Virus record (IMG/VR): IMGVR_UViG_3300034073_005389
Location: 297,491-361,490 of that record
Direction: 5' to 3' (one strand)
DNA: 64,000 nt
The notes beneath the pieces were generated by a model. That model made no database searches and was not told the DNA's origin. It saw only the letters and a list, made by a program, of their open reading frames with translations. Below are positions 884-64,000 of this stretch, piece after piece. The first letter of the stretch is position 1, and each line of letters starts with the position of its first letter. A program made the position numbers and the translations under genes.

Positions 884-971
884 ATAAACTTTATTTCATC
901 ATCTCGATTTCGACGCTTACCTTGCCCCTCACTTATAGTCGGGCTGGTTGCCCGATGGGCAACCGCAAGCT

Positions 972-1352
972 TTAGCTATCGATTTGTTGTAGCTTTTCAA
1001 AAAACTTAATCACATTCTCTCTAGACAACTTATATAGATTACCTCCAAAATCTTTGGTATCCATATAATAATTATACTGAACCATATCGGTTATATTCTT
1101 AACCGGTCTATAATCTTTGTCAAGATTAAAAAGAAAACTAAAGTCTGGAGACTTTACTAAATTACGTGTCGTAAGGGCATATATCATACCCTCTCCTTGT
1201 TTTAAAGGAGAAAATTTTTCCACACCCATTAAAGAAACAAGATAATAATCTTGTTGTGCATTTTCTGGATTAGATGAATTATTATAATGAAATTCGGCAG
1301 GAGTCACCCAAGCCACATAATTTTTAAAATGTGTATGACCCAAACATAACAT
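972..1352 (-). CDS. Hypothetical protein
   Basis: 126-aa ORF co-directional with neighbours. Confidence 0.55.
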   Translation of the reverse strand: MLCLGHTHFKNYVAWVTPAEFHYNNSSNPENAQQDYYLVSLMGVEKFSPLKQGEGMIYALTTRNLVKSPDFSFLFNLDKDYRPVKNITDMVQYNYYMDTKDFGGNLYKLSRENVIKFFEKLQQIDS

Positions 1353-1378
1353 AAATAAATCTTTCTACTTCATCAAAA

Positions 1379-1675
1379 TCAATAATTTTCTACTTGCTCA
1401 ACAATTTCTAATTCTTGAAAAAATTCCTGCTCTACAGGGCGACCTTGGTCAATTGGTTCAATTCCACAATCTGTAGGAATTGCAATCAGCACAACTTGAT
1501 TATTAATCACTACTTCTTTGTAGTCAACAGGACAGCCCAATTCTTTAGGTAAAGATGATGAAAAATCCTCGGCAGAATCTTGAACAGTATCCTGCTCCAA
1601 CTCCTCTGATTCTGGTAACTCTTGGAAGTTATAACAACCAGTTAATACCAAACAAAGAATAAAAAAATGTCTCAT
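1379..1675 (-). CDS. Putative lipoprotein
   Basis: MRHFFILCLVLTGC signal peptide with lipobox-like LTGC. Confidence 0.6.
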   Translation of the reverse strand: MRHFFILCLVLTGCYNFQELPESEELEQDTVQDSAEDFSSSLPKELGCPVDYKEVVINNQVVLIAIPTDCGIEPIDQGRPVEQEFFQELEIVEQVENY

Positions 1676-1705
1676 GACTAAATACCAATTAATTAGTTAA
1701 CTTAA

Positions 1706-2194
1706 CTAATCTCCTTTATTATTTTTTAAAAATTCAGTAGCAGATTTATTAATACGCTCTTCTCTTTTATCTTCTTGCTCTCTATAATGATCTTTACATA
1801 GCGTCATGTACCAACTACCAAGAACTCTATTCTCTCCAGGAACACCACAAGTTTCACAAATATGAAAACTCATATTCTCTGCCATAGAAATGGCTCCAGA
1901 AATATAATCATTGGTGCAGCTAGTGTAAAACCTAAGACCACCAAATTTTTCTTTAACTTGAACCGCAGTAAATAAATCTAACAAACTCTTATTAGTTTTA
2001 TGATCAAAATCTTTATTTACTGGAGAATCTGGATTACTAACTCTCCACTCAATATGTTCAAGATGAGATTCAATTATTGAGCATAGATTATCTATTATCT
2101 TATACCAACCAGAACCACACTCTATGTGTGTTAGATTTTTAAACACTCTAGGATACTTTTCCAGTAAAGTAGAATACCAAACTTCTTTAGTCAT
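1706..2194 (-). CDS. Conserved phage protein with C-terminal Zn-binding motif
   Basis: GW...QVKEKFGGLRFY...CETCG...TLC..H pattern common in large phages. Confidence 0.7.
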   Translation of the reverse strand: MTKEVWYSTLLEKYPRVFKNLTHIECGSGWYKIIDNLCSIIESHLEHIEWRVSNPDSPVNKDFDHKTNKSLLDLFTAVQVKEKFGGLRFYTSCTNDYISGAISMAENMSFHICETCGVPGENRVLGSWYMTLCKDHYREQEDKREERINKSATEFLKNNKGD

Positions 2195-2355
2195 AAAAGC
2201 TCTTCTTTGTGTTCAGTATGAGTATCATCACAATGCTTCTCATGACATTTATGAGAATATTTTGTATGATACCATGTATGAAGTTTCTTAAACCATATTC
2301 CAACAAAAGGAATAAGAGACATAATTAAAAATAATTCATCAGCACAAAAATGCAT
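2191..2355 (-). CDS. Small His-rich membrane-associated protein (54 aa, not in ORF track)
   Basis: AGAGGAG RBS; MHFCADELFLIMSLIPFVGIWFKKLHTWYHTKYSHKCHEKHCDDTHTEHKEELL; ATGA overlap with next gene. Confidence 0.6.
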   Translation of the reverse strand: MHFCADELFLIMSLIPFVGIWFKKLHTWYHTKYSHKCHEKHCDDTHTEHKEELL

Positions 2356-2749
2356 ACTGGACTCCTCTTAAGAAATTTGCAACCGAGAATATATCACCTA
2401 CATATATTTTAGATATTAAAAATATATTTATAACTTTGTTAAAGCGGCAAAACTAGTAAGTCTACCACTGTAGTACAGCAACAAAGTTATAAATAATATT
2501 TTAAAGACTACCTTCTAAGTGATAAATCTCTCGACAAAAAATGGGATATATTATAGGGAAGAGTAGTTCTTTTATGATCTAAGAAGATCTGATCAAGTAG
2601 AAGAAAATAATATACAGTAAAATTAATACTATCTCCCAGAGTTTTTGGGAGAAGTTGACTTTCTCTTTAGAACTTCCATCAGGTGGATGGCAGGTAAAAG
2701 TCAATTAATATCCTAATTATTAGGGTTATACTAATATAAGATATTATTA

Positions 2750-3265
2750 CTATTTATTTTTAATTCTAGAAGTCTGGACAAACAGATCATTCATGCTCAA
2801 ATAGTAATCATTAACATCCAGCTCATAGTAACCACAATTTTTCAGCATTATGGCTGAGTTTTTCACATCTCCTGCATGAAAAAATGTTAATGCTCCTTTA
2901 CATCTATTTTTAATAACTTTCCAATAATTCCTAGCGCCTTCATGGAAGGAAAGGAAAGATCTAAATCTAGAACTAGCTACTTTGTAGTATGCCCTAGTGG
3001 CATGATTAACATGGGCTCCAATATTTCCTAAATTATAATTATATACTAATTTACCTTTACCATTTTCAAGTGCAATTTGTGACCAAGCCATATTTACAGT
3101 ATTTTTGGACGCTGGCTTATCAAAAACTTCTAAATAAGTTTCTTTTAAAACTTCTTTTAATTTTTCTTCTTGAATAGGTGTTTGGTGTTTTTTTATCTCA
3201 AAATTAGCAGAACATTCTTCAACAGGACCAAATGTTCCAAGTATAATACACAATGATTTTATCAT
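2750..3265 (-). CDS. Glucosaminidase/FlgJ-like peptidoglycan hydrolase
   Basis: QIALENG...YNLGNI...FRSF.SF.EG...GYY lysozyme-fold pattern. Confidence 0.65.
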   Translation of the reverse strand: MIKSLCIILGTFGPVEECSANFEIKKHQTPIQEEKLKEVLKETYLEVFDKPASKNTVNMAWSQIALENGKGKLVYNYNLGNIGAHVNHATRAYYKVASSRFRSFLSFHEGARNYWKVIKNRCKGALTFFHAGDVKNSAIMLKNCGYYELDVNDYYLSMNDLFVQTSRIKNK

Positions 3266-3327
3266 TATATTCTCCTTTTATGTTTGTTATGGTGGGAATA
3301 TAATATATAATTATGAATAGAAAATAG

Positions 3328-3400
3328 CTGAGGAAGAAGGATTCGAACCTTCAACTTACGGATTCAAAGTCCGTCATTCTGCCAATTGAATTATTCCTCA
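3328..3400 (-). tRNA. tRNA-Gln(TTG)
   Basis: Cloverleaf; ACGGA-CT-TTG-AA-TCCGT; GGTTCGAATCC. Confidence 0.93.
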
Positions 3401-3540
3401 ATGCACTAATTAAATTATTAGTGCAAAAATTTTAGTGCAAAACAATCTCTTCATCTGAACTATCAGCTGAATCTTCTAAGGAGATAAGAACTTCTCCATC
3501 TGGATAAATATATGTATACCATCCACGAGGAAATTTATCT

Positions 3541-3777
3541 TCACTCATCATCTTCTTCGTCCTCATCGCTATCAAAATCTTCTTCCTCTTCCTCTTCTTC
3601 ATCATCATCTGATTCAAATTCTACTAACTCACCATCTTCATCTTGCATAAGACCAGTAAGAATAACTATTTGACCATCGTCGTCAGTTGTAAGTTCAAAA
3701 CCATTTGGAAATAGTTCTTCCAATGCTTCTTCTAAATCTTCAAGAGTCATCATATGTATCTCCTTATTATTAAGCAC
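3541..3777 (-). CDS. Small extremely acidic protein
   Basis: 78 aa with D/E-only C-terminal tail. Confidence 0.65.
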   Translation of the reverse strand: MLNNKEIHMMTLEDLEEALEELFPNGFELTTDDDGQIVILTGLMQDEDGELVEFESDDDEEEEEEEDFDSDEDEEDDE

Positions 3778-3900
3778 TATTATAACAGTAGTTGTAAGAT
3801 TTTTACTTTTTAAGTAAAAATTTTGGCGCTATGTGATTGAACGTGATCTCACACACAGCAACCTGCTAACTATGGCAAATAGTTAGCAGGTGATTATCAT

Positions 3901-4239
3901 TCACTTCATATGAACGCGAACTACTCCGCCACCGTGACCACGAACCACAGTAAACTGAGTTCCAAGAGAAGTTTGAGCCTTAATATAGCTATGAACCTGC
4001 TTGCTAATTGCTGGGAACAAAGCTGGATCTTTAGAGATTGCAGTAGATACAGTGTAAACCAGCATAGTAGTTGGGATAGCAGAAGCACTATTATCAAATA
4101 CTGCGTGCATAGCGCGCTCAATATCTGTAGCTGGAACCTCATTTCGTGAAACCCAATCAGTTAGTGCCTTAGTATAAGCGGCAACTGAAGCGTTTACGTC
4201 AACTGAACCATCAACACCATGAACTGTGAACTTATCCAT
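3901..4239 (-). CDS. Winged-helix-like protein, paralog of 49469-49801 and 50578-50925
   Basis: DGSVD..A N-terminus and FTVVRGHGGGV wing-like C-terminus shared with paralogs. Confidence 0.6.
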   Translation of the reverse strand: MDKFTVHGVDGSVDVNASVAAYTKALTDWVSRNEVPATDIERAMHAVFDNSASAIPTTMLVYTVSTAISKDPALFPAISKQVHSYIKAQTSLGTQFTVVRGHGGGVVRVHMK

Positions 4240-4315
4240 TTTTAATTATATCTCCAATTATTATAATACTACTCAAACAATCTAAAATAGAACTATTCTA
4301 TTTTAGAAAACTAAA

Positions 4316-4648
4316 TCAATCTTCTGATACTGATTCAGAATTTGGGGCTACTTGAACCTCTACCTTTTTAGTGGGCTTCTTACTAGCATTTGGATCAGGC
4401 TTAAGAATACCACCATGAGCGCCACGCCTAACTAGTACACCAGGATATGACTCTAGCAAAAATCGAATTGTTGGATATAGTTGAGGACCAGTCATTCCGA
4501 ATTCTGCACCTAACTCAGCGGCAAGGGCAGTTGCAGGGATTTTATCTCCTGGATTTAGAGCTTCAATTCTCTCAGATGCCTTAACAAAAATTTCACGAAT
4601 CTTATTTAGAGAAGCCTCTACATGATCTACATTATGCATTTTATTCAC
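4316..4648 (-). CDS. Putative winged-helix DNA-binding protein
   Basis: PGDKIPATALAAELG helix and VRRGAHGGI Rrf2/GntR-like wing. Confidence 0.55.
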   Translation of the reverse strand: MNKMHNVDHVEASLNKIREIFVKASERIEALNPGDKIPATALAAELGAEFGMTGPQLYPTIRFLLESYPGVLVRRGAHGGILKPDPNASKKPTKKVEVQVAPNSESVSED

Positions 4649-4751
4649 TCCAATTTACTTTGTTACTAACTTGGTACAGGGTACCGCCTCTACTTATAAA
4701 AACCTAGGTTGCCCGATGGGCAACCCATATAATTACTTTATCTACAATAAC

Positions 4752-5078
4752 TCAATTTCGAGTTAAACCATTTTGGCGAATCCAAAGTCGAGCAGCCTTA
4801 ATTGCTCTAGTTGGTGCGTCTTTATAAGATACAATATCTTTCATTACCGCTTCTGAAATATCGTGCATAGTAGCTTCTCTATGCATGGAGATCTTTAGCG
4901 GTTCCTCCAAAAGACGACCAAGAGCAAGTTGTCGTGCTACTGCACGATTAAAACGATCTCTTGGATTTAAGACTGAAAGCTGATAAGTAGCTGTCCCACT
5001 ACTACGGTTCACTTGAATTGCAAGACAACCAACGGGATGACCATTTTCTGAACGAAGATACATAATACGACGTGACAT
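4752..5078 (-). CDS. Conserved hypothetical phage protein
   Basis: RBS; DRFNRAVARQLALGR motif. Confidence 0.6.
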   Translation of the reverse strand: MSRRIMYLRSENGHPVGCLAIQVNRSSGTATYQLSVLNPRDRFNRAVARQLALGRLLEEPLKISMHREATMHDISEAVMKDIVSYKDAPTRAIKAARLWIRQNGLTRN

Positions 5079-5152
5079 ATTTATTACTCCTTGTTAACTA
5101 AACTTGGTTTAATTAGGTATTGATATTAGACGATTAAGATAAGGATTAAGTT

Positions 5153-5854
5153 ATGAATAGAATAATTATTTGTGGAAAAGATTATAGCCTTGATTGCCCC
5201 ACTTTAACTTGGAAAGATAAAGGCGGATTTAATGCTTATCCTTACAAAAAGTTTAATTTAAGAAACTTAAAATTAGAAGATTTAAAGAAACAATCTTCTT
5301 GTTTTGTATTGCACCATTCAGTTACTTATACTGCGGCTACTTGCCAAGCCGTTTTAGTAAGCAGGGGTTTATCCTGTACTTTTCTAATTGATGATAATGA
5401 CGTAGATGGATATGCTACATTATATCAAACTTTAGATGTAAAAGAAGGTGCTTGGTCACATGGCGAAATGAATAATTTTGGTGCCGGAGTAGAAATTTGT
5501 TATATGCCCCAAGCATGGGAAAATAAAAATTTGTACTCCGAAAGTAATAGAAAAAAATTTAATGTTCCAGAACACTTTGTAGTGGATGATACAGTTCAAG
5601 GAAGAACATTAAAAGTCTTTGCGCCTACTGAAGCTCAAATAAAAACTTTAAAATGTTTAATTAAAACAGTATGTTCTGCTCTTGATATTCCTATGATTTT
5701 TCCTAAAAATCAGGAAGGAAATATTATTAAAAGTATTTTATCAGATCCTAAACAACATAAAGGATTACTGGGTCATTTTAATATTAGTAAACAAAAAAAC
5801 GACCCAGCAGGTTTAGATTTAGATTATCTTGAAAAATTTTTAAATGAAGAATAG
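5153..5854 (+). CDS. N-acetylmuramoyl-L-alanine amidase (Amidase_2-like)
   Basis: FVLHHS, AWSHG, GVEIC, GHF...KNDP zinc-amidase motifs. Confidence 0.8.
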   Translation: MNRIIICGKDYSLDCPTLTWKDKGGFNAYPYKKFNLRNLKLEDLKKQSSCFVLHHSVTYTAATCQAVLVSRGLSCTFLIDDNDVDGYATLYQTLDVKEGAWSHGEMNNFGAGVEICYMPQAWENKNLYSESNRKKFNVPEHFVVDDTVQGRTLKVFAPTEAQIKTLKCLIKTVCSALDIPMIFPKNQEGNIIKSILSDPKQHKGLLGHFNISKQKNDPAGLDLDYLEKFLNEE

Positions 5855-5934
5855 TTTTTTTATTTGGGGTTCGTTGCCTTACCCTCACTTCTAGTGAGGC
5901 GAGATGACCGATGGGAACCCCTCCTTGAATCACG

Positions 5935-7014
5935 CTATTTATTTAAATTATAGCCTTCTCCAACTAATTTTAGTTGCATTCTAGAATTTAATTTTGGTTC
6001 AAATCTTTCTTTTGTAGTTTTAACTACAAAACCTTCTCTAATATGCTTGCCGCCTAAGGTAGTCAATCCTTCAGCATAAGGATACATCTGATCTTTGCCA
6101 AGCCATTTCCCACGATACAACTCAGGGACCATATCTAATTGTAGATCGTTAATAATCTCAACAAATTTATCATAATCTAAATATCTTCCTGTTTTACGAT
6201 CCCAGATATCAAAAAATCTAATTCTTGACTGATACTTACCATTTACTGGTGTTGTATCGTACTTAAATCCTTTAACTAGTCCATATAGCTCTCCAAAGAA
6301 AACTAAATTAGGATATCTAGTTAATTTTTCTTCTAGATTATAACGGATAGCAATATCCCACCAAGAATCTCCACCATCTCTTCTTTTATAGAGATTTCTA
6401 GATTTTACCCAGAATTTTTCTCCATCAAAACAATAGGAAGAATTCGCCCCATGTATTTTTTCGTTAATTACTATTTCTTCGTCAGGAAGTAAGCAATTTG
6501 CATACTGTCTCAATCCAGATACATCATAAAATGGAATACTCCATCCTACAGGAGATTTTTCCGTTTTTCCTGGATTAAGTTTTGCTTGCTCAGTATGTTC
6601 TTCTTCATCTTCTTCCATCTTTTTAAGATTAAAGAATTCAACTACTGAATCCCCAACAGAAAAATTATATGGGGCAGGAACCAGCATTCCCTGACTATAA
6701 ATATTTCTAATTTTCTTTGCCTTGATAACTCTGTATTTATCGGGAACAGAACCTAAAGTATATTTAGTGCCAATTACTTTTACTTCTCCTGATTCTGTTT
6801 TTTGAGTAAGTTTTGGGCAAAGAAAATAAAATTGTTGAGTGTCAGGAACGATAGTATCAGTTGGAAAATAAGCCGCTACACTATTTACTTTAAATTCCCC
6901 AGTCTTAATTATTACTGGATAATCTCCAAGTACAGTTGCTATTTCTAAATTATCAGCATTAGGATGCTTTTCTATTTTTTCAATAATTACTACCTGTGGA
7001 TTCCATTCTGACAT
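5935..7014 (-). CDS. ATP-dependent RNA ligase (DRB0094/Rnl2-like with N-terminal OB domain)
   Basis: HPNADNL N-terminus, EKIHGAN motif I, FGELYG, FFDI, REGFVVK. Confidence 0.88.
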   Translation of the reverse strand: MSEWNPQVVIIEKIEKHPNADNLEIATVLGDYPVIIKTGEFKVNSVAAYFPTDTIVPDTQQFYFLCPKLTQKTESGEVKVIGTKYTLGSVPDKYRVIKAKKIRNIYSQGMLVPAPYNFSVGDSVVEFFNLKKMEEDEEEHTEQAKLNPGKTEKSPVGWSIPFYDVSGLRQYANCLLPDEEIVINEKIHGANSSYCFDGEKFWVKSRNLYKRRDGGDSWWDIAIRYNLEEKLTRYPNLVFFGELYGLVKGFKYDTTPVNGKYQSRIRFFDIWDRKTGRYLDYDKFVEIINDLQLDMVPELYRGKWLGKDQMYPYAEGLTTLGGKHIREGFVVKTTKERFEPKLNSRMQLKLVGEGYNLNK

Positions 7015-7108
7015 AATAATCTCCTTTAAGACTTAAAACTAAATATGGTCAGAAGAATACTAATACCTAGTATTATTTGTAATTTAAAAAATATTATATC
7101 CATAATTT

Positions 7109-7369
7109 TTACACAAACAAATCTAAACCATATTCAGTCAAGGTAATATACTCATCATATTTAGCTGTGCCACTTTTTAATTTATCTTTAAGATAAATTA
7201 AATGCTTACAAGTCTTGCTACCACGATGAATAAAAGAAGGACAATTACAAGACCACTTTACTCCCCTACCTCCTTCTTTTTTAGATTTGCCTGTCCTGCT
7301 AATTCTATAAGGAATATCTTTATTTTTATTACTAAAACTCCAAACTAAAGCTACAGTTTCTTGATCCAT
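7109..7369 (-). CDS. SWIM zinc-finger protein
   Basis: CNCP...CKHL. Confidence 0.75.
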   Translation of the reverse strand: MDQETVALVWSFSNKNKDIPYRISRTGKSKKEGGRGVKWSCNCPSFIHRGSKTCKHLIYLKDKLKSGTAKYDEYITLTEYGLDLFV

Positions 7370-8316
7370 TAATTTTTAATATCCTTAAAAAATTGTAACA
7401 AATTTGTTTCGGAAAAGTTTTTACGCTCTGATGAAGTACTAGATACTGCAAAATTTTGCTCTACTGCATCCAAATACATAGTAAATGTTCCATCAGAACC
7501 CATATAAAAAGTATTCCATGCTTCAGATGTAAAATACCTTTTGGCATTTAATTGTTGCAAAGCAAGGTTATCAAAAGATAAAATAATGTTATTATATTTG
7601 AAATATTTAACTAATTGAGTATACCACTCATATTTATTAGCTTCTACTTCTTTATTTTTTAAATAGTAATTTAAACCATTACCATATTTCTTATAGCCAA
7701 GAATTAATACCTTGCACTCTTTATTATTTTGTTGACAAAGTTGATATAATTGATCAATGTCGTCAACATGATTAATTCCCATTATTACATGAAATACTAG
7801 ATGATCAGTTAATGAAATAATAGGTTGAATATCGTTCAGATACTTCGAATCAGAATAAGAAATACCAATACCAAAAACTAAATTATCAGTAATTAATTTT
7901 TCAATTAAAGACTGATAATTTTTAACATGTTTTTGATTAATAGTAATATTAGGAATTAATCCTTGTTTTCTAACATTTTGTAGGAAGCTAATTAGCTTAG
8001 GATGAGCTAATGGATTACCTCCTCCAATTGCTATCTCTACACCAGCCGGTAGAACCGAAAGCTCTAATTCTAACCTCTCTAGGTCAGCATGTTTGCCTTT
8101 TAAATTAGACTTTTCATGGCAAAATGCGCATATAGGATTATCTGATGTTGGTTCGCAATAATTAGTGATCTTTACATCTAAAGATGATGGAAAGTCTACT
8201 GTTAATAGTTCTTGAGAACTATATTCTCTTTCAAGAGAGCCATCTTCAAATAATGTAACAGTAGTATTTCCATTTTGATACTTATGAAGAATTTGGCTCA
8301 TCTTTGATTTTATCAA
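7369..8316 (-). CDS. Radical SAM protein (variant CX8CX2C)
   Basis: DVKITNYC.......ICAFCHE, IAIGGGNPL; probable start MSQIL. Confidence 0.8.
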   Translation of the reverse strand: MIKSKMSQILHKYQNGNTTVTLFEDGSLEREYSSQELLTVDFPSSLDVKITNYCEPTSDNPICAFCHEKSNLKGKHADLERLELELSVLPAGVEIAIGGGNPLAHPKLISFLQNVRKQGLIPNITINQKHVKNYQSLIEKLITDNLVFGIGISYSDSKYLNDIQPIISLTDHLVFHVIMGINHVDDIDQLYQLCQQNNKECKVLILGYKKYGNGLNYYLKNKEVEANKYEWYTQLVKYFKYNNIILSFDNLALQQLNAKRYFTSEAWNTFYMGSDGTFTMYLDAVEQNFAVSSTSSERKNFSETNLLQFFKDIKN

Positions 8317-9079: not shown

Positions 9080-9101
9080 ATGTTACCTAATAACAATTTA
9101 G

Positions 9102-9183
9102 TGGGAAGTGATGAATTTGAACCACCGTAGTCTATGACAAAGCGTTTACAGCGCTCCCCCGTTAGCCACTTGGGTAACTTCCC
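9102..9183 (-). tRNA. tRNA-Tyr(GTA)
   Basis: GAGCG-CT-GTA-AA-CGCTT, long variable arm. Confidence 0.9.
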
Positions 9184-55074: not shown

Positions 55075-55202
55075 TGAACCCTCCTAGACAAAGCCGTGAT
55101 TGGCTCAATGGTAGTTGTGCAGGTTGACCGATGGGTACGGACCACTGAAACATGCTTGGAAGCATTCGCTTCCAAGCACGTTTTGTTGAGAGTGTTGTTA
55201 GA

Positions 55203-56827: not shown

Positions 56828-57039
56828 GTCTACTTATCCTTTCTTGCGTGAACAATAGTCCAACGCAAAGAAAAAGAACCCCATAGAACATGAAGTCAAA
56901 TAACTCCATAACTATGTTTGTACATGTTGACCGATGGGTGCGAACCATTGAAACAAGAACCCAGGATTGCTGTTGCAATCCTGGGTTCTTATCTGCTCAC
57001 CCACCGGAATCCGTTAGGACTCAACAGTGGGTGAGTGTG

Positions 57040-57900
57040 TCAACCGAGCGCCAGCTTCGCCAGGGCGATTGCGCCCTCCCGACTGCGGGCGCCGCCGATG
57101 AACCGTGCGTTGTGGCAGAATACGGAATCATGAACTCCAGTCACTGCCGCCAGCTGTTCGTTTCGTAGCCCCGCCCATGCCTCGGGGAGCGGTCGGCGTT
57201 GCCCGAAGCTCCCCATGCTGGGCGGAACGCACTGGACCAGCCAGTCGTCCGCTTGGGGGAACACGAGGAAGAGCGCGTGGGTGCTCTCCTCCACCACCGT
57301 CTGCATGACCGGCATGAACCGGTCCAGAACGATGATCTTCCCCTCGATTGCGTTGGAGATGGCGTGGCGAGCGCCCTCCAACGCGAGCATCCGACCCTGC
57401 GCAGAGGCGATCACCCTGCGCAGGTGTGCCTCTGCAAACTCGACGGCGCGGGCGAATGCGTCGTCGAAGTTTTGCGCCTCGTGCCAGCAGGGGTTGAACC
57501 CGCTGACCACATCAGAGAAGGTGTGGTGATCCACACCTTCAGTAATGCTGCGGGTGCCGTACCCGCAGTCGAGGGCGTCAACCGCCCAGATGAGGTCGCT
57601 TTCGACCTCCCCCTCCACGCCGGGGGCGATGGAAGCACCAAAGTGCTTCCACACGAGACCGGCGCTGCTGTAGGGCACCCCATTGGGGCGCACGCCAGCG
57701 CCCCCCTTCTGGTGGTGGTCGAATCGTAGCGTGGTGGGGTCATAGACCCCTCCCACGTCCACAACAACCATCCCCATCTCGATCACCTTGGGATCGCGGG
57801 TCCGGATAACCGGACCCTCGAACCCCGCCATGCGCAAAATAGCGCAGGCGAGAACGTCGTCGGCGTGGAAGGGACCATTGTGAGTGACAATACTGCTCAT
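57040..57900 (-). CDS. MYG1/UPF0160-family DHH exonuclease
   Basis: THNGPFHADD, RTRD, DVGGVYD, FDHHQ, SSAGLVW, FCH. Confidence 0.9.
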   Translation of the reverse strand: MSSIVTHNGPFHADDVLACAILRMAGFEGPVIRTRDPKVIEMGMVVVDVGGVYDPTTLRFDHHQKGGAGVRPNGVPYSSAGLVWKHFGASIAPGVEGEVESDLIWAVDALDCGYGTRSITEGVDHHTFSDVVSGFNPCWHEAQNFDDAFARAVEFAEAHLRRVIASAQGRMLALEGARHAISNAIEGKIIVLDRFMPVMQTVVEESTHALFLVFPQADDWLVQCVPPSMGSFGQRRPLPEAWAGLRNEQLAAVTGVHDSVFCHNARFIGGARSREGAIALAKLALG

Positions 57901-58032
57901 GTGAGCCTCCTAGAAAGCCGTGTGTGAAGTTGTACGGCTCACATACAGTTGTGCAAGTTGACCGATGGGTACAAGCCATGTAGAAAATCGGTGAGTCAGA
58001 ATCTCGAAAGACTCAATGACTCACCGAGTGTG

Positions 58033-58506
58033 TCAACCGTAGAGCGTTCGGAGGGTCGCGCAAACGCGCGTCGCCTCCGATTGTTGGAACCGCTCCACTT
58101 TCTGGAGCAGTTCGATTGACTCTTCCCGGTCCATGCCGGGAAGCTGACGGAGTGCCAGCAACAGCAGTTTGCTGCTGGCGGTGGGTGCGCCGTCGAAGCG
58201 CACCACCTCACCGTTGAGGGTGAGGGAGAAGGGCTCATCGCCCTCCTCGCCCTCGCCCTCGCCCTCATTGCCGAGTGCCTCACCGAGTGACCATGCGGTC
58301 ACTCGGTGGGAGGAGGTGCCTGAGTGCCCGTCAAGGCGCACCGACACCCCCTCCTCGTGGGTGAGGGTAAGAACTGCGGGGAGGAGTAACGTACTCCTCC
58401 CGATGTGGTGCCTGAACGAGCCGAGGACAATCGCCCCCAGCTCGTTCAGCACCACCTGGCGGGGTTCAAACCCCGCCATGGCTGCGAAACCAGTTGCAAT
58501 AATCAT
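58033..58506 (-). CDS. Cassette hypothetical protein
   Basis: AGGAGG RBS, start MIIAT. Confidence 0.6.
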   Translation of the reverse strand: MIIATGFAAMAGFEPRQVVLNELGAIVLGSFRHHIGRSTLLLPAVLTLTHEEGVSVRLDGHSGTSSHRVTAWSLGEALGNEGEGEGEEGDEPFSLTLNGEVVRFDGAPTASSKLLLLALRQLPGMDREESIELLQKVERFQQSEATRVCATLRTLYG

Positions 58507-58680
58507 TGCAACCTCCTTGCAGAGTCTATCCACTACCCGTAATAGATCAGCATGACCTGTCATCAGGTAACAGCTTCGACTCTCACATACAGTTGTGCAA
58601 GTTGACCGATGGGTACAAGCCATGTAGAATCAGTGAGCCGGAATCCCGAAGGACTCAACAGCTCACTGATTCCGGGACAC

Positions 58681-58911
58681 CTACAGATCGTAGACGCCCC
58701 GTTGTCCCACGATTGACCAAGAGGAGTACTCCTCTTGGTCAATCATGGTTGTGTGTCCGACGATGAGGTTTTCAAACCTCTCGTCGGTCACCAGTTTGTA
58801 GGCGTCGCCACGTAGCAACGCCTTTGCCGCCCGCATGGCGAGCGGCAGAGGGAGACCCGTCTTTCGACGGATCTCCCTCCCCAAAACCACACGTCTTCGT
58901 TTCAGTGTCAT
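58681..58911 (-). CDS. Cassette basic hypothetical protein
   Basis: GGAGG RBS, start MTLKRRR. Confidence 0.6.
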   Translation of the reverse strand: MTLKRRRVVLGREIRRKTGLPLPLAMRAAKALLRGDAYKLVTDERFENLIVGHTTMIDQEEYSSWSIVGQRGVYDL

Positions 58912-59059
58912 TTGACACCTCCACTTACTTGTTTGCAAGTTGACCGATGGGTGCGTGCCAGTTAGATTGACCAGCCGGAATCCCGAAGGACTCAACAGCT
59001 GGTCAATACTACCCCCTCACTGAAGCTCAACCCTCTCAGGGAACTTCAGTGAGGGACCT

Positions 59060-59407
59060 TCACACCTCACACCAGGGAATAGTCTCCCTGGTGAAATCCT
59101 CCTCCACCTCATGCCAGCCGAACTGGTCGGCATGAGGTGAAACCCTCCCCACGTAGCGGACCAAACGAAATGGTCCGCTGTGGGGGTAGTCCGTATCGTA
59201 CGCGGCGGACTCTTCGTCCACCTCGTACGCCACCACCCACGCCATTCCGGCGTGGAAGCCACGCGCCCACGGGGGCGCGTCGTCGCCCCGAAGAGCCCAG
59301 AGCCCTTCGGGGTGGGTATAGAGGAGGTCACGGACCTCCTCCATGGTGGGGATGGGGAGGTCCGTCTCCGGAACCTCCCCATCCCAATCAGGAAACATCA
59401 CCCTCAT
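59060..59407 (-). CDS. Cassette acidic hypothetical protein
   Basis: AGGAGG RBS, start MRVMF. Confidence 0.65.
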   Translation of the reverse strand: MRVMFPDWDGEVPETDLPIPTMEEVRDLLYTHPEGLWALRGDDAPPWARGFHAGMAWVVAYEVDEESAAYDTDYPHSGPFRLVRYVGRVSPHADQFGWHEVEEDFTRETIPWCEV

Positions 59408-59575
59408 GGTGACCTCCTTGTAGAGTCTATCCACTACCCGCAACAGATCACCACGATCTATTATCAGGCAGTAGCTTCGACCCTCACATACAGTTATGCA
59501 AGTTGACCGATGGGTGCACGCCAGTTAGATTGACCAGCCGGAATCCCGAAGGACTCAACAGCTGGTCAATCTCAC

Positions 59576-59797
59576 TCACTGCGGGAGGAAGCTCCGAAGA
59601 GCCTCCATCGCCACAGCGAGGGTTGCGCCCCCGCCCGTGCGGTCCCACGCCCCTCGGGCGTGGTTCTCCGCTGCTGGCACGTAGGTGACGTGCCAGCAGC
59701 GCCCGCAGGCGCACCCATCCGGGGAAGGTGGCGTGATCTCCACCTTCCCCGGACCCCAGGCGGCACAAGCCGCCTGTACCAGAGATTCGAAGTCCAT
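59576..59797 (-). CDS. Cassette hypothetical protein
   Basis: AGGAGG RBS, start MDFES. Confidence 0.6.
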   Translation of the reverse strand: MDFESLVQAACAAWGPGKVEITPPSPDGCACGRCWHVTYVPAAENHARGAWDRTGGGATLAVAMEALRSFLPQ

Positions 59798-59972
59798 GTG
59801 GACCTCCTCAGAGAGCGTATCCACTACCCGCAATAGATCACCACGATCTATCATCAGATAGAGGTTTCCACCCTCACATGCAGTTATGCAGGTTGACCGA
59901 TGGGTGCGAGCAGTGTAGAAACTCGGCAAGCCGGAATCCCTTACGGGACTCAACAGCTTGCCGAGGGGGGAG

Positions 59973-60185
59973 TCAATGAAGCTTGAAAAGCTTCATTGCC
60001 TCCCCCGCTGTCATTTTTTGCGGGAAGTCGTATTCATATACGACCCCCGCTACGTCGTACGTGAGTCCGAGGTACACAAGTACCTCGGACTCTGGGGGGA
60101 GGACTGCCAGCCTCTGGCAGTCCTCCCCGTGCAAATATGGATAGCCCCATAAATCGGGGCTCATCCACTCGTAGAATTCCTCCAT
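59973..60185 (-). CDS. Cassette protein, paralog of 61286-61489
   Basis: M.EFYE...LP..SEV.VY.G..Y...G.VY....P..MTA.EA.K.F. Confidence 0.7.
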   Translation of the reverse strand: MEEFYEWMSPDLWGYPYLHGEDCQRLAVLPPESEVLVYLGLTYDVAGVVYEYDFPQKMTAGEAMKLFKLH

Positions 60186-60447
60186 GGAATTCTCCTTAGA
60201 GAGCGTATCCACTACCCGCAATAGATCACCATAATCCATTATCAGGTAACAGCTTCAACTCTCACATACAGTTACGCAGGTTGACCGATGGGTGCAAGCC
60301 ATGTATATTAACAAAAAAATTGAAATACTCATATACTCTTGTGTGAAAAGAAATAAGTAACTTATACAAGTTGACCGATGGGTGCAAGCCGTGTAGAGTA
60401 ACGAGCCGGAATCCTTTGCAGGACTCAACGACTCGTCACTCGCATTG

Positions 60448-61110
60448 TTACTTGCGATTTTTCTTGCCACCAAAGTGGCTCAGAAAACTCGCAATCGCAC
60501 CCGCCGATGCGGGCTCACCTCGCACCGGAGGCGGAGGGGGAGGAGGAGGGGGAGGAGGAGGAGGGGGAGGGTATTCTGAATAATACCTCTCCTTATAATA
60601 CTCCTCCTTCAATCCCCCTGCACTCATGACAAAGCGCGAATACGCGATTTTGTCATGAAAGTTCTCCCAAGAGACCGACCAATCAGCCTCAATTGGGAGA
60701 ACCAGCCACTCTTTGCTGCGGTTTCCATACCGGGACGTGCTCAAATCCCGGTGAAGTTTACACCCCCGGAACACCGGGTCCCCCAGGGTGTAGCGTTTCC
60801 CCCCTTGGGGGATTGCCCTGACCGTGACGCATTGCGCCACGATCAGATCGTCGGCAGCCTTTTCAGCTGCCTTGCGTGCGGCTTCTTCAGCCGCTTTGGC
60901 TGCTTGCGCAGCCTCCCGCGCAGCTGCCTGCGCCGCCCGCTCCGCCCGCTCCTCCGCCAGACGAGCCTCTACCTGGGCGGCAAATGCCGGGTCCAGGTAG
61001 CTCCTTCCCGCCGCCCCGATAGGCGGCGGAGCCGCTTGCCCCCACGGATCGTAGGAGCCGCGCTGCGTGCCGGGCTCCTCCCCGTTGAGATAACGGTTCC
61101 AGTCACCCAT
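60448..61110 (-). CDS. Cassette protein with Ala/Glu/Lys helix and poly-Pro tract
   Basis: GGAGG RBS; AAEEAARKAAEK; run of about 14 Pro. Confidence 0.7.
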   Translation of the reverse strand: MGDWNRYLNGEEPGTQRGSYDPWGQAAPPPIGAAGRSYLDPAFAAQVEARLAEERAERAAQAAAREAAQAAKAAEEAARKAAEKAADDLIVAQCVTVRAIPQGGKRYTLGDPVFRGCKLHRDLSTSRYGNRSKEWLVLPIEADWSVSWENFHDKIAYSRFVMSAGGLKEEYYKERYYSEYPPPPPPPPPPPPPPPVRGEPASAGAIASFLSHFGGKKNRK

Positions 61111-61285
61111 AGGTGACCTCCTTGTAGAGTCTATCCACTACCCGCAATAGATCACCATGATCTATTATCAGGTAGAGGCTTCCACTCTCACATGCAGTTA
61201 TGCAGGTTGACCGATGGGTGCGAGCAGTGTAGAAACTCGACAAGCCGGAATCCCTTGCGAGACTCAACGGCTTGCCGAGCGACGG

Positions 61286-61489
61286 TCAGAGGAAGGCTTT
61301 TTGAGCCTCCTCTGCCGTCATTACTTCCGGGGCGCCGTGTTGGTACACGTACCCCGACATTTCGTATTCAATTCCGAAGTACACGCGTACTTCGGAATCG
61401 ATCGGGAGGGCGCGGAGGCGGACTTTATCCGCCTCCGCGAGCCAGGCGCGACCTACGTCGCCCCCCCCGCACTCGTAGAATTCCTGCAT
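61286..61489 (-). CDS. Cassette protein, paralog of 59973-60185
   Basis: See paralog alignment; AAGGAG RBS. Confidence 0.7.
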   Translation of the reverse strand: MQEFYECGGGDVGRAWLAEADKVRLRALPIDSEVRVYFGIEYEMSGYVYQHGAPEVMTAEEAQKAFL

Positions 61490-61804
61490 GGAATTCTCCT
61501 TAGAGAGCGTATCCACTACCCGTAACAGATCACCACGATCTATTATCAGATAGGGGCTTCCACTCTCACATATAGTTGTGCAGGTTGACCGATGGGTGCA
61601 GACCATGTATATTAACAAAAAAATTGAAGCAATCAACCGCTACTCGGTATTACTTGCGTGCCTTGTCGAGAAAATAATAAGTAAATAAATAAATACAAAA
61701 CAATAACTTGAATAGCCATAGATTCAAATAAGTTGACCGATGGGTGCAAACCACCAAAACTTGAACCCCCGGACTCACCTATACAGATGAGCCGGGGGTC
61801 CATC

Positions 61805-62035
61805 TCAGTCGGCACCTCCTTTCTCGGTTGCGGTGGCGGCGGTGGCGTACCCGTGGAACCACGGGTCGCCACCACCGATGAGGTGGGCGTCGGAGGCTGC
61901 CCAGTCAGCCTCCGACATGTTGTTGAGGGCGCGGGGACCCCAGTAGGGTCCCGCCCCCGAACCAAAGGTAAAGGCGTCACCTGGGGACGCCTCTACCTCC
62001 CAGGTTTTACCCTGGAAAACAACGACGCACTTCAT
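61805..62035 (-). CDS. Cassette hypothetical protein
   Basis: Between motif 62096 and 3' hairpin. Confidence 0.55.
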   Translation of the reverse strand: MKCVVVFQGKTWEVEASPGDAFTFGSGAGPYWGPRALNNMSEADWAASDAHLIGGGDPWFHGYATAATATEKGGAD

Positions 62036-62259
62036 GTGCGCCCCTTTCTGAGAGCCTCGGCGGGATTGCCATAGCTCTCACATACAGTTACGCAGGTTGA
62101 CCGATGGGTGCGAACCATGCAAACAAAAAAGTGGATGGTCTTTCGACCATCCACTCATCTAGCTGCGGTCTCGCTCCAGATTGGTGGAGTCCCCGCTCAG
62201 GACTGCTAGAGTCCCCTCAGGTTACGCCTGAGGACGTTCCCTCGTCACCACCGAGAAGA

Positions 62260-62619
62260 TCAGACGATCTCTCGGAAAGCGACGAACCCGAATACGGCGG
62301 TCTTGGTGACCGAACCGTCAGGGTTCGTCACTTCGACGGAGCGTCGCTCCGTCGTGGTGACGACCACCCGTCGCCCCTTGGAGAGCAGGCTCCGGATGGT
62401 GGTGTAGACCAGGGAGGTTTCTCCCATGATCATCACCACGTCTCCGGGAGCGCATTGCTCCACCAAAGTGGCGGCGAGGGTGGCAACTTCCGCCATGGTG
62501 GCGGAAGCGGGGACGTTCGGGAACGCGATGTCCCTGATGTCCCCGCCGAGCGCCTTGGCGGCGCTCAGCTGGTCCTCGCCCCACTTCTGGGACGGGTGGT
62601 TAGAAATGTTCACAAACAT
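62260..62619 (-). CDS. csx20: Csx20-like CRISPR-associated (putative ring nuclease) protein
   Basis: FVNISNHPS.KW...Q..AA..G.I.D..FP.V, MGE, TTER, K...F.FV.FRE pattern recalled for Csx20-type proteins. Confidence 0.65.
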   Translation of the reverse strand: MFVNISNHPSQKWGEDQLSAAKALGGDIRDIAFPNVPASATMAEVATLAATLVEQCAPGDVVMIMGETSLVYTTIRSLLSKGRRVVVTTTERRSVEVTNPDGSVTKTAVFGFVAFREIV

Positions 62620-63149
62620 TTCCAACCTTCCTATCGGCTTGATCGGGCTCCTCTATCAAGCCCAGCCGATAACCCTACCACAAGCGATGAATCAACATGA
62701 CTCATCATCAAGCGGCAGGCTCACTTATAGTTGTGCAGGTTGACCGATGGGTGCAGACCCCTGAAATAAAAAACCCCCCGGTCACTCCTGCCCACTATCA
62801 CCCGGTGCCTTTCAGCGTTGGTGAAGTGTTTTTATGGCAATAATTGGAGGGACCGGGGGGGATGCTAGGTCATAACAGCATCCTCCTATAACTGTCACTT
62901 CACTTAGTAACAGTTACACTAATAGATAAGTATGTTGACCGATGGGTGCGGACCCCTGAAATAAAAAAACCCCGCCACGCTGCAAAGCGTGGCGGGGCAC
63001 AACAGGGCATAGAGATAACCCTTTCCGTAGCCTATAGTAGTAAGATAACTCCTTCCGGCAAAATGCTCCGAAGTTATCTTCGTACCTTAGCTACACTAAT
63101 AGATAAGTATGTTGACCGATGGGTTAACTTGTTTGCATTTAACAAATAA

Positions 63150-63468
63150 AAAAACCCTGACCAGCTTTCGCCAGTCAGGGTTTGTATGAACGGCGTAGGG
63201 ACTCTGCCTCCCTCTTTCACCCTCTAAGTCACGGGCTCCGTTCTACTTGGTCCTTTGAGCATCGCAATGGTGTGCGTGCTCGTTTTTCCTCCGCGCCGAC
63301 CCCAGGGTAGGACTCTTTGCCCCGTATCGGGTTTGCGTGTGCGCTTATCCCGCCCTGTCTATCCAGGTTTCAGGCGGTTCTTTCCCGGCGCGCACAATGG
63401 GTCCTATAAAGGACCGTCAGTAGGGGAACACATAAGTGTCCGAGATCCCCAGATGCAACTAGCATCCT
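63150..63468 (-). ncRNA. Candidate structured non-coding RNA (~320 nt)
   Basis: Between motif 63484 and a terminator; no RBS-led ORF; nested long-range stems. Confidence 0.5.
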
Positions 63469-63616
63469 ACTATAACTCAGTATGTTGACCGATGGGTACA
63501 AACCATGTAGAATCTCGACAAGCCAGAATCCCTTGCGGAACTCAACAGCTTGTCGAGTCTCTCTCCCCACCTCTACCAGAATCCGTTAGGACTCGATGAT
63601 AGAGGTGGGGAGGTGT

Positions 63617-63859
63617 TTACTTGCGGCGGCTAAGCTGGTGGGCTCGCGCCCAGCCAGCCGCCGACGCCGCCCATGCCGCCACCGCCGCCGTGAGGCAGGC
63701 GATGGCGAGCAGGGCGATTCTGGCGGGGGCGTTTTTCGCCCCCGCCGCCCTCGCCGCCCAGTGGGCGGCGAGGGCGCGCCAAAGCGCGCTCCTCTCCGCC
63801 GCCCAGGCGGCGCGCGCCGACCTGAGGTCGGCGCGGATTCGAAAGAGGGACTTTTCCAT
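63617..63859 (-). CDS. Cassette Ala/Arg/Trp-rich small protein
   Basis: Purine-rich RBS, followed by conserved 3' hairpin. Confidence 0.55.
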   Translation of the reverse strand: MEKSLFRIRADLRSARAAWAAERSALWRALAAHWAARAAGAKNAPARIALLAIACLTAAVAAWAASAAGWARAHQLSRRK

Positions 63860-64000
63860 GGTCCCTTCCCTTCAAGCCCCATTGACACCCATAGACAATC
63901 GTCTCTCACCATGAGAGATTGGACTTCTCTGGCATGCCATGCGGCTCATGTATGGTTTGCTAGGTTGACCGATGGGTACAAACCATGTAGAAATTCGACA

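What the first reader, a model, noticed from the sequence alone, without database searches (positions are those of the whole stretch)
947..63976. Window-wide, strictly oriented 13-bp motif (~50 copies) with a fixed-distance second element
Seen: CCCATCGGTCAAC-N9-Y(A/G)(T/G)A(A/G)GT(G/A)(A/G)G is conserved across both AT-rich and GC-rich DNA, and leader hairpins begin right after the GT, as expected for a start site. The core is pseudo-palindromic and a perfect inverted repeat at 947 and 4708 (GGTTGCCC-GAT-GGGCAACC). Copies at 947, 23168, 33228 and 43768 share ~38 bp. Inference: a promoter for a phage-encoded or virion-packaged RNA polymerase or sigma factor, or a dimeric activator site; density rises about eight-fold to the right.
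Basis: partly seen in the sequence, partly recalled or inferred. Interest (0 to 1): 0.78.

Follow-up and report, generated by a model that had tools for sequence, protein, structure and literature searches.

The report
Jumbo-phage promoter repeated 52 times
A 13-letter DNA word repeated about 50 times, always in the same direction, is most likely the on-switch placed before each early gene of an uncultured 371-kb bacterial virus, and no known type of polymerase or sigma factor explains how it is read.

Summary
CCCATCGGTCAAC occurs 50 times in the window (37 exact, 13 with one mismatch), always on the minus strand, against 0.74 expected. It occurs nowhere else in the 361-kb record. The record is a trimmed copy of a circular ~371-kb jumbo-phage contig, and two more copies lie just past the window's right end.

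Each copy sits between the 3' hairpin of one minus-strand gene and the ribosome site of the next. A second element, TAtAAGTG, follows at a fixed 9 nt.

In related metagenome contigs the 13-mer shows 0 changes in 533 aligned positions, against 7.4% elsewhere. In freshwater relatives, gene cassettes are gained and lost exactly at motif copies.

My reading: a phage-specific promoter built into terminator-promoter cassettes, like the PeSLs of T4-type phages. Ribosome-site positions and the onset of leader pairing put the RNA start 15-17 nt after AAC. That geometry fits neither sigma-70 nor sigma-54.

No T7-type, multisubunit or DxDxD RNA polymerase gene was found. The phage has a 209-aa sigma (best matched by NCBIfam's generic sigma-70/ECF model) and ordinary sigma-70-type promoters elsewhere.

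The first 14 kb of the array is 55% GC and avoids the codons read by the phage's own tRNAs.

There is no transcript evidence.

The parts
947..63976 (-). Whole array inside the window: 50 copies of the 13-mer, all on the minus strand. Two more copies lie beyond the right end, in L295.
947..49867 (-). AT-rich part (32-40% GC), 16 copies. Motif starts: 947, 4708, 5903, 16516, 20071, 23168, 27181, 33228, 36856, 39050, 42301, 43768, 46032, 48581, 49006, 49855. Ten of the 13 one-mismatch variants lie here. Strong second element TAtAAGTGAGGG; G-run and TT just upstream.
50986..63976 (-). GC-rich part (49-59% GC), 34 copies, 33 of them exact, one about every 410 bp. Each stands before one small gene. 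Upstream context is tGyA, TGG and a T-tract; downstream is yTGCAnAAcTaTAtGTGaG.
57936..57981 (-). Example of one complete promoter unit, before the MYG1-family gene: upstream tGyA, the 13-mer (57957-57969), a 9-nt spacer, the second element, then the first leader bases.
50986..51149 (-). Four copies in tandem (spacings 46, 56 and 49 nt). Only the last one (50986-50998) has a recognisable second element and a gene behind it.
946..964 (-). Variant copy that forms a perfect 8-3-8 inverted repeat. A second such copy lies at 4707-4725.
58625..58675 (-). Class R hairpin (example): about 20 bp with a 2-nt bulge, followed by (A/T)TTCTA and then the motif. Others lie at 57981-58031, 58963-59013, 59526-59576, 59916-59966, 60394-60444, 61230-61280 and 63508-63558. 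G.U pairs show that it folds on the minus-strand RNA.
52157..52184 (-). Intrinsic-terminator-like hairpin plus T-run directly upstream of copy 52127 (example). Similar ones lie at 52471-52508, 53891-53934, 55587-55622 and 62969-62998. By my reading of the output, at least 30 of the 34 GC-rich copies are preceded by a stable hairpin.
57043..57900 (-). Largest cassette gene (286 aa, MYG1/UPF0160 family). The other cassette genes encode 57-220 aa proteins; the ten scanned have no family match.
3327..45985 (-). Eleven tRNA genes inside the AT-rich part of the array: Leu-UAA x4, Arg-UCU x2, Ile-UAU, Leu-CAA, Gln, Tyr, Gly. Copy 46032 lies 59 nt before a tRNA-Leu.
12960..12987 (-). One promoter of the other, sigma-70-like class (TTGACA, A/T-rich spacer, TAnnnT). 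This class is otherwise found at 195-276 kb of the genome.

Best explanation
The 13-mer is the upstream recognition element of a phage-specific promoter. With the second element (TAtAAGTG, 9 nt further on) it directs minus-strand transcription that starts about 15-17 nt after AAC, at positions 27-29 counted from the first C as 0. In the GC-rich 14 kb nearly every small gene is a self-contained cassette: 3' hairpin (intrinsic terminator or class R hairpin), promoter, short structured leader, ribosome site, gene. Because the promoters are identical, they also act as recombination points at which cassettes are lost, gained or swapped, as described for the PeSL elements of T4-type phages.

Shown here: the copy number, orientation and confinement to one 64-kb segment; the placement relative to hairpins and genes; the perfect conservation in relatives; and the cassette indels at motif copies.

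Inferred: that it is a promoter, where the RNA starts, and the timing. I take the array to be an early class because it consists of small orphan genes next to an origin-like region, and because its first genes do not need the phage tRNAs.

My preference, about 0.45, is host core RNA polymerase carrying a phage-made specificity factor: the 209-aa or 146-aa sigma-like proteins, or an unknown one. The confidence value given below (0.72) is for the promoter role only.
For: Abundance and orientation:
- 50 copies against 0.74 expected, all on the gene strand, and none elsewhere in 361 kb.

Position relative to genes:
- A Shine-Dalgarno site plus start codon opening an ORF of at least 25 codons lies downstream of most copies, 40-110 nt downstream in the GC-rich part.
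- One copy lies 59 nt before a tRNA gene.
- The GC-rich region holds 33 terminator-like sites against 12.2 expected, mostly on the minus strand just upstream of copies.
- The class R hairpin has 11 of 20 pairs with compensatory changes and invariant G.U pairs, so it folds on minus-strand RNA.

Start-site inference:
- In the shortest leaders the ribosome site begins exactly at position 29-31 in both phages.
- Positions 14-27 pair with the leader no more than shuffled sequence does (mean z -0.2 and -0.4). Positions 29-36 pair far more (mean z +1.35; 42% of sites above 1.64).
- The commonest hairpin start is position 28-29.
- Positions 17-28 form an A/T-rich island inside 55% GC DNA.

Conservation and shuffling:
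- Related contigs show 0 differences in 533 aligned 13-mer positions against 961 in 13,006 elsewhere; positions 22-33 show 3.4%.
- A freshwater contig whose flanks are only 68-89% identical carries 42 copies, all in one orientation.
- One deletion runs from one motif copy to the next with 14 shared letters. Another spans one copy-to-copy distance, one cassette is replaced, and several loose ends start at the upstream edge of copies.

For a host-core reader:
- No phage RNA polymerase was found.
- The phage has sigma-70-family genes.
- It has canonical sigma-70-type promoters elsewhere.
Against: - There are no transcript data: no RNA run was listed, so the start site and even the promoter role are indirect.
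- With a start at positions 27-29, the 13-mer lies at -29 to -17 and TATAAG at -7 to -2. No sigma-70-family holoenzyme is known to use this geometry, which weakens the host-core reading.
- Neither sigma-like gene lies in or next to the array.
- The -35 position is not conserved across the AT-rich and GC-rich sets.
- Three tandem copies lack the second element.
- A few leaders in the relative can pair from position 13-14. If that pairing is real, it would need an earlier start.
Confidence: 0.72

Rival explanations
1. It is a promoter, but it is read by a phage-encoded, possibly virion-delivered, RNA polymerase of a kind that sequence searches do not recognise. That enzyme uses a two-part promoter: a binding element at -29 to -17 and an initiation element TATAAGT|G.
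For: - The architecture looks like single-subunit or phage polymerase promoters: a long exact upstream element, an A/T-rich TATA-like stretch right at the start, a purine-rich first transcribed sequence, and one promoter per gene.
- It fits neither sigma-70 nor sigma-54 spacing.
- Ten ORFs of 728-2377 aa have no functional assignment. Four of them lie next to the portal gene, where injected proteins are often encoded.
Against: - Pfam models for T7-type and for both large multisubunit subunits give nothing in six frames.
- phmmer --max with T7 RNA polymerase gives nothing below E = 0.2.
- No DxDxD metal site occurs in the unassigned large ORFs apart from an acidic run and one odd hit. No T7 motif B/C pair was found.
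- The cassettes end in bacterial-type intrinsic terminators.
- The phage keeps sigma genes and sigma-70-type promoters, so it clearly uses the host enzyme.
Confidence: 0.27
2. It is a promoter read by the phage's 209-aa sigma on host core enzyme. The 3' half of the 13-mer (GTCAA C/T) would be an ECF-type -10 element, and CCCATCG an upstream extension of it. RNA would then start at about position 19-20, and the second element would lie in the transcript at +3 to +10.
For: - The 209-aa ORF has sigma regions 2 and 4. Its best NCBIfam match is the generic sigma-70/ECF superfamily model (58.9 bits, cut-off 42.9).
- E. coli sigma-E reads GTC as its -10 element (PMC6648896; PMC7598289), and the motif contains GTC at positions 7-9.
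- Positions 19-20 are mostly purines.
- Single-element promoters are common for phage sigmas (my own knowledge).
Against: - No GGAAC-like -35 element is conserved 16-17 bp upstream.
- Twelve invariant contiguous bases are more than a sigma region 2 normally reads.
- The strongly conserved second element would have no role in initiation.
- Leader structure starts at position 29, not 20.
- The sigma gene is about 270 kb away, among late-looking genes (ribonucleotide reductase, tail genes).
Confidence: 0.18
3. The 13-mer is an operator. A phage DNA-binding protein (repressor or activator) binds it on top of weak host-type promoters, to switch the whole early block off or on together.
For: - It is far better conserved than its flanks.
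- It is weakly symmetric, and perfectly so at 947 and 4708.
- In the GC-rich set a TTGyA lies just upstream, at about the -35 position if RNA starts near position 29.
- A 146-aa region-4-type helix-turn-helix protein exists.
Against: - No acceptable -10 hexamer lies at positions 17-22.
- TTGyA is absent from the AT-rich set.
- Strict one-way orientation and a second element at fixed distance are not expected of a symmetric operator.
- No MotA or AsiA homologue was found.
Confidence: 0.08
4. It is not a promoter. The conserved word would act in RNA (a processing, antitermination or protein-binding signal in long transcripts), or only as a DNA site for cassette recombination, packaging or partition.
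For: - It lies on the same strand as all genes, so it would be present in read-through RNA.
- Class R hairpins resemble RNase III-type sites.
- Cassette indels have their ends at the copies.
Against: - Strong intrinsic terminators stand directly before most GC-rich copies, so new initiation is needed.
- The 13-mer has no conserved pairing partner.
- The very first copy follows 1 kb of non-coding DNA and precedes the first gene.
- There is no tyrosine recombinase.
- Orientation-biased words such as Chi or KOPS are spread genome-wide and lie within genes, whereas this motif is intergenic and confined to 64 kb.
Confidence: 0.1

Closest known systems
PeSL (promoter-early stem-loop) composite terminator/promoter cassettes of T4-type phages (PMC2839356, PMC4122927)
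   Same: A conserved stem-loop plus early promoter stands between small, mostly orphan genes in a plastic region. The repeats serve as points of exchange, so related phages differ by insertion, deletion or replacement of whole cassettes. That pattern is seen here.
   Different: PeSL promoters are host sigma-70 early promoters. This one has no sigma-70 hexamers at usable positions. It is a 13-bp G+C-rich word with a second element at the start site. The phage is not T4-like: it has a DnaE-type polymerase, and the array of 52 copies is confined to one 64-kb block.
T7-group single-subunit polymerase promoters, and the yeast mitochondrial ATATAAGTA promoter (from memory)
   Same: A long, almost invariant, strictly oriented promoter occurs in many copies. 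It has a 13-bp specificity part, a TATA-like stretch directly before a purine start, and a purine-rich first transcribed sequence. TATAAGT(G/A) nearly equals the mitochondrial nonamer.
   Different: The specificity part lies one helical turn further upstream (-29 to -17 instead of -17 to -5). No PF00940-type polymerase gene is detectable.
Early promoters of jumbo phages with their own multisubunit polymerases (phiKZ, AR9; PMC7598289)
   Same: A conserved motif can be found by eye upstream of presumed early operons of a jumbo phage. The motif is phage-specific.
   Different: Those motifs are about 10 nt long, A/T-rich and centred at -10, and they are read by a virion polymerase whose beta/beta' genes are recognisable. 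Here the motif is G+C-rich and lies further upstream, and no such genes exist.
T4 middle promoters (MotA box plus sigma-70 -10 element), from memory
   Same: A phage-specific box replaces the -35 element in a delayed-early promoter class, in a phage that also has plain host-type promoters.
   Different: No TAnnnT lies at -12 to -7. No MotA or AsiA homologue was found.
SPO1 host-takeover module (from memory)
   Same: A terminal block of many small genes, each with its own strong promoter and terminator, is expressed first.
   Different: The SPO1 promoters are host sigma-A promoters.

Membership tests
Sigma-70 (housekeeping) promoter | TTGACA-like -35 and TAnnnT -10 hexamers, 17+/-1 bp apart, with the -10 ending about 7 nt before the start | tested here: not met
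   No such pair lies on the minus strand at the copies. TATAAG ends 1-2 nt before the inferred start. The phage's real sigma-70-like promoters look quite different.
Sigma-54 promoter | GG and GC elements with a fixed GG-N10-GC spacing at -24/-12 | tested here: not met
   The motif reads GG-N7-GC. The GC is not conserved in the AT-rich set.
ECF sigma promoter | GGAAC-type -35 element about 16-17 bp upstream of a GTC-type -10 element | tested here: inconclusive
   GTC is present at positions 7-9 and a 209-aa sigma best matched by the generic sigma-70/ECF model is encoded. No conserved -35 was found. The implied start at 19-20 disagrees with the pairing test.
T7-type (single-subunit polymerase) promoter | A cognate PF00940-family polymerase gene in the same genome | tested here: not met
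   Pfam six-frame scan and phmmer --max with T7 gene 1 were both negative, including the 9.6 kb missing from the record.
T7-type (single-subunit polymerase) promoter | Contiguous conserved block from about -17 to +6, with TATA before a purine start | tested here: inconclusive
   A TATA-like stretch and a purine start are present, but the specific block lies at -29 to -17 with a variable 9-nt spacer. The start is inferred only.
Jumbo-phage virion-polymerase early promoter (phiKZ/AR9 type) | Split beta/beta'-like polymerase genes, and an A/T-rich motif of about 10 nt centred at -10 | tested here: not met
   PF00623 and PF00562 scans were negative and no NADFDGD-like site exists. The motif is G+C-rich.
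N4 virion-polymerase promoter | Promoter hairpin (5-7 bp stem, 3-nt loop) at every site | tested here: not met
   Only copies 947 and 4708 can form such a hairpin.
PeSL-type composite terminator/promoter cassette | A stem-loop terminator fused to an early promoter, repeated between small genes | tested here: met
PeSL-type composite terminator/promoter cassette | Indels and replacements between related phages have their ends in the repeats | tested here: met
   Joints 53511/53852 (14 shared letters) and 54749/55086, a replacement at 54813-55091, and loose ends at the edges of copies.
PeSL-type composite terminator/promoter cassette | The promoter part is a host sigma-70 early promoter, in a T4-type phage | tested here: not met
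Integron cassette array (attC sites) | IntI-type tyrosine recombinase, and promoterless cassettes | tested here: not met
   No PF00589 match. Cassettes carry their own promoter-like and terminator-like signals.
Orientation-biased chromosomal words (Chi, KOPS) | Genome-wide spread, also inside genes | tested here: not met
   Confined to 64 of 371 kb and intergenic.

The most novel reading that the evidence does not exclude
A jumbo phage with no recognisable RNA polymerase gene drives a 64-kb block of 52 transcription units from a two-part promoter: a 13-bp box at -29 to -17 plus an initiator at the start. No known bacterial sigma family uses that geometry. That implies either a polymerase or an initiation factor of a kind not yet described. 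The same block begins with 14-16 kb recoded to 55% GC that avoids the codons read by the phage's own tRNAs, as if it were made to be translated before the phage has rebuilt the tRNA pool.
Probability: 0.3. Interest if true: 0.85.

Novelty: new variant of a known kind. Interest (0 to 1): 0.6.

Why it matters
If this is a promoter of an unknown reader, the phage offers a short, exact, orthogonal promoter with a matching factor still to be found. It would also be a new case of how huge phages take over transcription without their own polymerase.

The cassette array shows PeSL-like shuffling outside the T4 group. It gives a ready marker for the early gene set of an uncultured phage lineage present in groundwater and lakes.

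The split in codon usage between the first genes and the rest, together with the phage tRNAs, gives a testable model of staged translation takeover.

Tried and rejected
- Nucleotide search of the phage collection with both ends of the window: no match.
- Pattern scans of viral contigs: only single chance hits.
- Two metagenome loci with three copies each (L167, L212) are an unrelated 26-bp tandem repeat.
- RNA runs: none listed.
- Protein-DNA complex prediction of the 209-aa sigma with a promoter: not folded by the tool, so it is no evidence either way.
- Polymerase hunt: Pfam and PHROGs on 30 large ORFs, PDB sequence search on four, Atlas search on three, regex for DxDxD and for T7 motifs B/C, and phmmer with T7 gene 1. 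All were negative. A RADIDGD site in the 1338-aa ORF lies in a dockerin-like calcium-binding region.
- MotA/AsiA: negative. Tyrosine recombinase: negative.
- Host guess from the MYG1 gene: the best relatives are only 38-47% identical and are spread over many phyla.
- Search for another long conserved word in the other 297 kb: none.
- Idea that copies 947, 23168, 33228 and 43768 head a repeated RNA gene: rejected, because similarity ends about 12 nt after the GT.

Full report
**What the window is**

The window is the last 64 kb of an IMG/VR record of 361,490 bp labelled 'provirus'. The record is about 32% GC, and almost all its genes lie on the minus strand. It encodes a portal, a tail sheath, a baseplate wedge, a DnaE-type polymerase and a TubZ-like tubulin with an intein. 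It is therefore a jumbo myovirus-like phage.

No cultured phage is close. The polymerase is at most 33% identical to any phage record. The DNA comes from subsurface metagenomes, and relatives occur in freshwater metagenomes of several studies.

A look-up of the rightmost gene found the untrimmed JGI contigs, 371,048 and 371,226 bp. They are circular permutations of each other. L295:250 is genome position 1 and L295:9860 is position 361490, so 9,609 bp are missing from the record. No integrase gene was found. The 'provirus' label is therefore most likely an artefact, and the map is a circle of about 371 kb.

**The observation**

CCCATCGGTCAAC has 50 matches in the window, all on the minus strand, against 0.74 expected. 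Of these, 37 are exact and 13 have one mismatch, and there are none elsewhere in the record. Two more copies follow in the missing piece, and the first of the whole array is at L295:8621.

Sixteen copies lie in the AT-rich 50 kb and 34 in the GC-rich last 14 kb.

Positions are counted from the first C as 0. On that scale the second element is real:
- In the AT-rich set, T22, G27 and T28 are invariant and G31-33 nearly so.
- In the GC-rich set the element is weaker.
- Conservation also reaches upstream. The GC-rich set has tGyA, TGG and a T-tract. The AT-rich set has a G-run and gTAAT at -16 to -12.

**Anatomy**

In the GC-rich part each copy sits in a short gap between genes. Upstream there is either an intrinsic-terminator-like hairpin with a T-run, or a 'class R' hairpin. 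The region holds 33 terminator-like sites against 12.2 expected.

The class R hairpin has about 20 bp and a 2-nt bulge. Eleven of its pairs show compensatory changes, and its invariant G.U pairs show that it folds on minus-strand RNA.

Downstream, 40-110 nt away, there is a Shine-Dalgarno site and a start codon opening a gene of 57-286 codons. Ten of these proteins have no family match. One is a MYG1-family protein.

In the AT-rich part the copies stand before operons and tRNA genes.

**Conservation**

A pattern scan of metagenome contigs found four contigs with many copies, all in one orientation:
- Two contigs are 93-96% identical to the window.
- A freshwater contig of 19.2 kb has 42 copies in flanks only 68-89% identical.
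- A fourth contig (L192, 9.8 kb, 23 copies) gives the same alignment to the window as part of the 19.2-kb contig.

I aligned three of these loci to the window and kept the best non-overlapping alignments. The 13-mer positions show 0 differences in 533. Elsewhere there are 961 in 13,006 (7.4%). Positions 22-33 show 3.4%.

I also laid contigs of four freshwater runs on 6 kb of the window. This showed:
- a deletion running exactly from copy 53512 to copy 53852, with 14 letters shared at the joint;
- a deletion of one copy-to-copy distance (54749/55086);
- a replacement of one cassette (54813-55091);
- loose ends that begin at the upstream edge of copies.

The copies are therefore also the seams at which cassettes are exchanged.

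**Where the RNA would start**

No RNA run was listed, so this is inference from three lines of evidence.

1. In the shortest leaders of both phages the ribosome site begins at position 29-31 (window copies 58939, 55856 and 42301; relative L182 1604 and 2626, L166 9502). The start therefore cannot lie further downstream.
2. In 59 leaders, 8-nt blocks at positions 14-21 and 20-27 pair with the downstream leader no more than their shuffles do (mean z -0.2 and -0.39). The block at 29-36 pairs much more (mean z +1.35; 42% of sites above 1.64). The commonest hairpin start is position 28-29.
3. Positions 17-28 are an A/T-rich island in 55% GC DNA.

Together these put the start at about position 27-29.

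**Which enzyme reads it**

With that start, the 13-mer lies at -29 to -17 and TATAAG at -7 to -2. This does not fit a sigma-70-family holoenzyme, which needs its -10 element at -12 to -7. The GG-N7-GC spacing does not fit sigma-54 either.

The phage does have ordinary sigma-70-type promoters: an A-rich upstream part, CTTGACA, an A/T-rich 16-nt spacer and TAnnnT. All of them are on the minus strand. They lie mainly at 195-276 kb, with one in the window at 12987. The host enzyme is therefore used, and the host is likely to have a standard sigma.

The phage also encodes two sigma-like proteins:
- a 209-aa sigma with regions 2 and 4, best matched by the generic sigma-70/ECF superfamily model;
- a 146-aa protein with region 4 only.

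The 3' half of the motif contains GTC, the -10 core of E. coli sigma-E (PMC6648896). This gives a second model, with a start at position 19-20. That model leaves the second element and the missing -35 unexplained.

No RNA polymerase gene of T7, multisubunit or two-barrel type was found. The search used family models, PDB sequence search, Atlas look-alikes, motif patterns and a filter-free phmmer search that included the missing 9.6 kb. MotA and AsiA are absent.

- host core enzyme with a phage specificity factor: about 0.45;
- an unrecognised phage polymerase: about 0.27;
- no promoter at all: about 0.1-0.2.

**Context that bears on timing**

Directly upstream of the first copy lies about 1 kb of non-coding DNA. 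It has a G-poor, C-rich part with several TATAAT boxes, purine-rich 11-bp repeats, and about twelve iterons that contain DnaA-box-like TGTGGATA(A/G). It looks like an origin.

The cassette genes have GC3 of 0.70 and use TTA, AGA and ATA at 1-2%. The AT-rich genes of the same window have GC3 of 0.22 and use those codons at 39%, 44% and 20%. These are the codons read by the window's own tRNAs: Leu-UAA four times, Arg-UCU twice and Ile-UAU.

This fits an order of events in which the GC-rich cassettes are expressed and translated first, then the tRNAs, then the AT-rich genes. That order is an inference, not a result.

**Comparison and verdict**

The closest described kind is the PeSL of T4-type phages: composite terminator/promoter repeats that flank small genes and mediate shuffling (PMC2839356, PMC4122927). 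This array meets those two features. It differs in promoter type and in phage lineage.

It works like the phage-specific promoter families of T7 or of phiKZ and AR9 (PMC7598289), but it fails their membership tests.

It is a real feature, a new variant of a known kind, and its reader is unresolved.

Noticed in passing
L295:7584-8620 (beyond the window's right end; missing from the IMG/VR record): About 1 kb of non-coding DNA lies directly upstream of the first motif copy. It has a terminator, a G-poor (6% G) C-rich stretch with 5-6 TATAAT boxes, purine-rich 11-bp repeats, and about 12 iterons with DnaA-box-like TGTGGATA(A/G). It is a candidate replication origin. One of the two assemblies breaks inside it (L295:7702).
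   Followed up: partly
whole record; L295, L296: The 'provirus' record is a trimmed copy of circularly permuted contigs of about 371 kb, and 9,609 bp were cut away. No integrase gene was found. The label is most likely an artefact of the jump in GC content.
   Followed up: yes
window 50000-64000 versus 1-50000: There is a sharp split in codon usage. Cassette genes have GC3 of 0.70 and almost no TTA, AGA or ATA. AT-rich genes have GC3 of 0.22 and use those codons heavily. The eleven tRNAs in the window read mainly those codons.
   Followed up: partly
window 58602-58630, 58940-58968, 59503-59531, 60281-60309, 60371-60399, 61585-61613, 63485-63513 (+ strand): On the plus strand, seven copies near the right end read as near-consensus sigma-70 promoters (TTGACC, 17 nt, TAGAAT, TAGATT, TAGAGT or TATATT) pointing against the genes. 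Five of the seven are class R copies; 60281 and 61585 are not. The class R arrangement is kept in the freshwater relative. These are either antisense promoters or a by-product of the hairpin tail.
   Followed up: partly
genome 195-276 kb; window 12960-12987 (-): There is a second promoter class: an A-rich upstream part, CTTGACA, a spacer with TTTATAAAAT, and TAnnnT. All copies are on the minus strand, with at least 13 clear cases.
   Followed up: partly
window 630-824 (-): A group I intron match (RF00028, 52.1 bits, gathering 50) lies about 135 nt downstream of motif copy 947-959. The interrupted gene was not identified.
   Followed up: no
window 57981-58031 and seven further places (-): The class R hairpin is a conserved 20-bp stem with a UU bulge and a tetraloop, with covarying outer pairs, followed by a short U-poor tail. 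It could be a weak terminator, an RNase III-type site or a 3' stabiliser.
   Followed up: partly
window 53511-53852, 54749-55091: Whole cassettes are deleted or replaced in freshwater relatives that are roughly 95% identical in the aligned pieces. The joints lie at or at a fixed offset from motif copies.
   Followed up: partly
genome 34305-37076 (L021) and 118554-123302 (L012): Inteins with LAGLIDADG domains interrupt a TubZ-like tubulin and a large ORF that also matches a head maturation protease.
   Followed up: no
genome 263-275 kb, 241.8-243.7 kb, 294.1-295.7 kb: Cell-like genes are present in the phage: PrkA, DUF444 and SpoVR in a row, isocitrate lyase, a Kelch-repeat protein, an NAD-dependent DNA ligase, and a class II aminoacyl-tRNA synthetase.
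   Followed up: no
window 51035-51149; L166 5730-5786; L182 8618-8644: Tandem 13-mer copies lack the second element and have no gene behind them. They are either decayed duplicates or extra binding sites.
   Followed up: no
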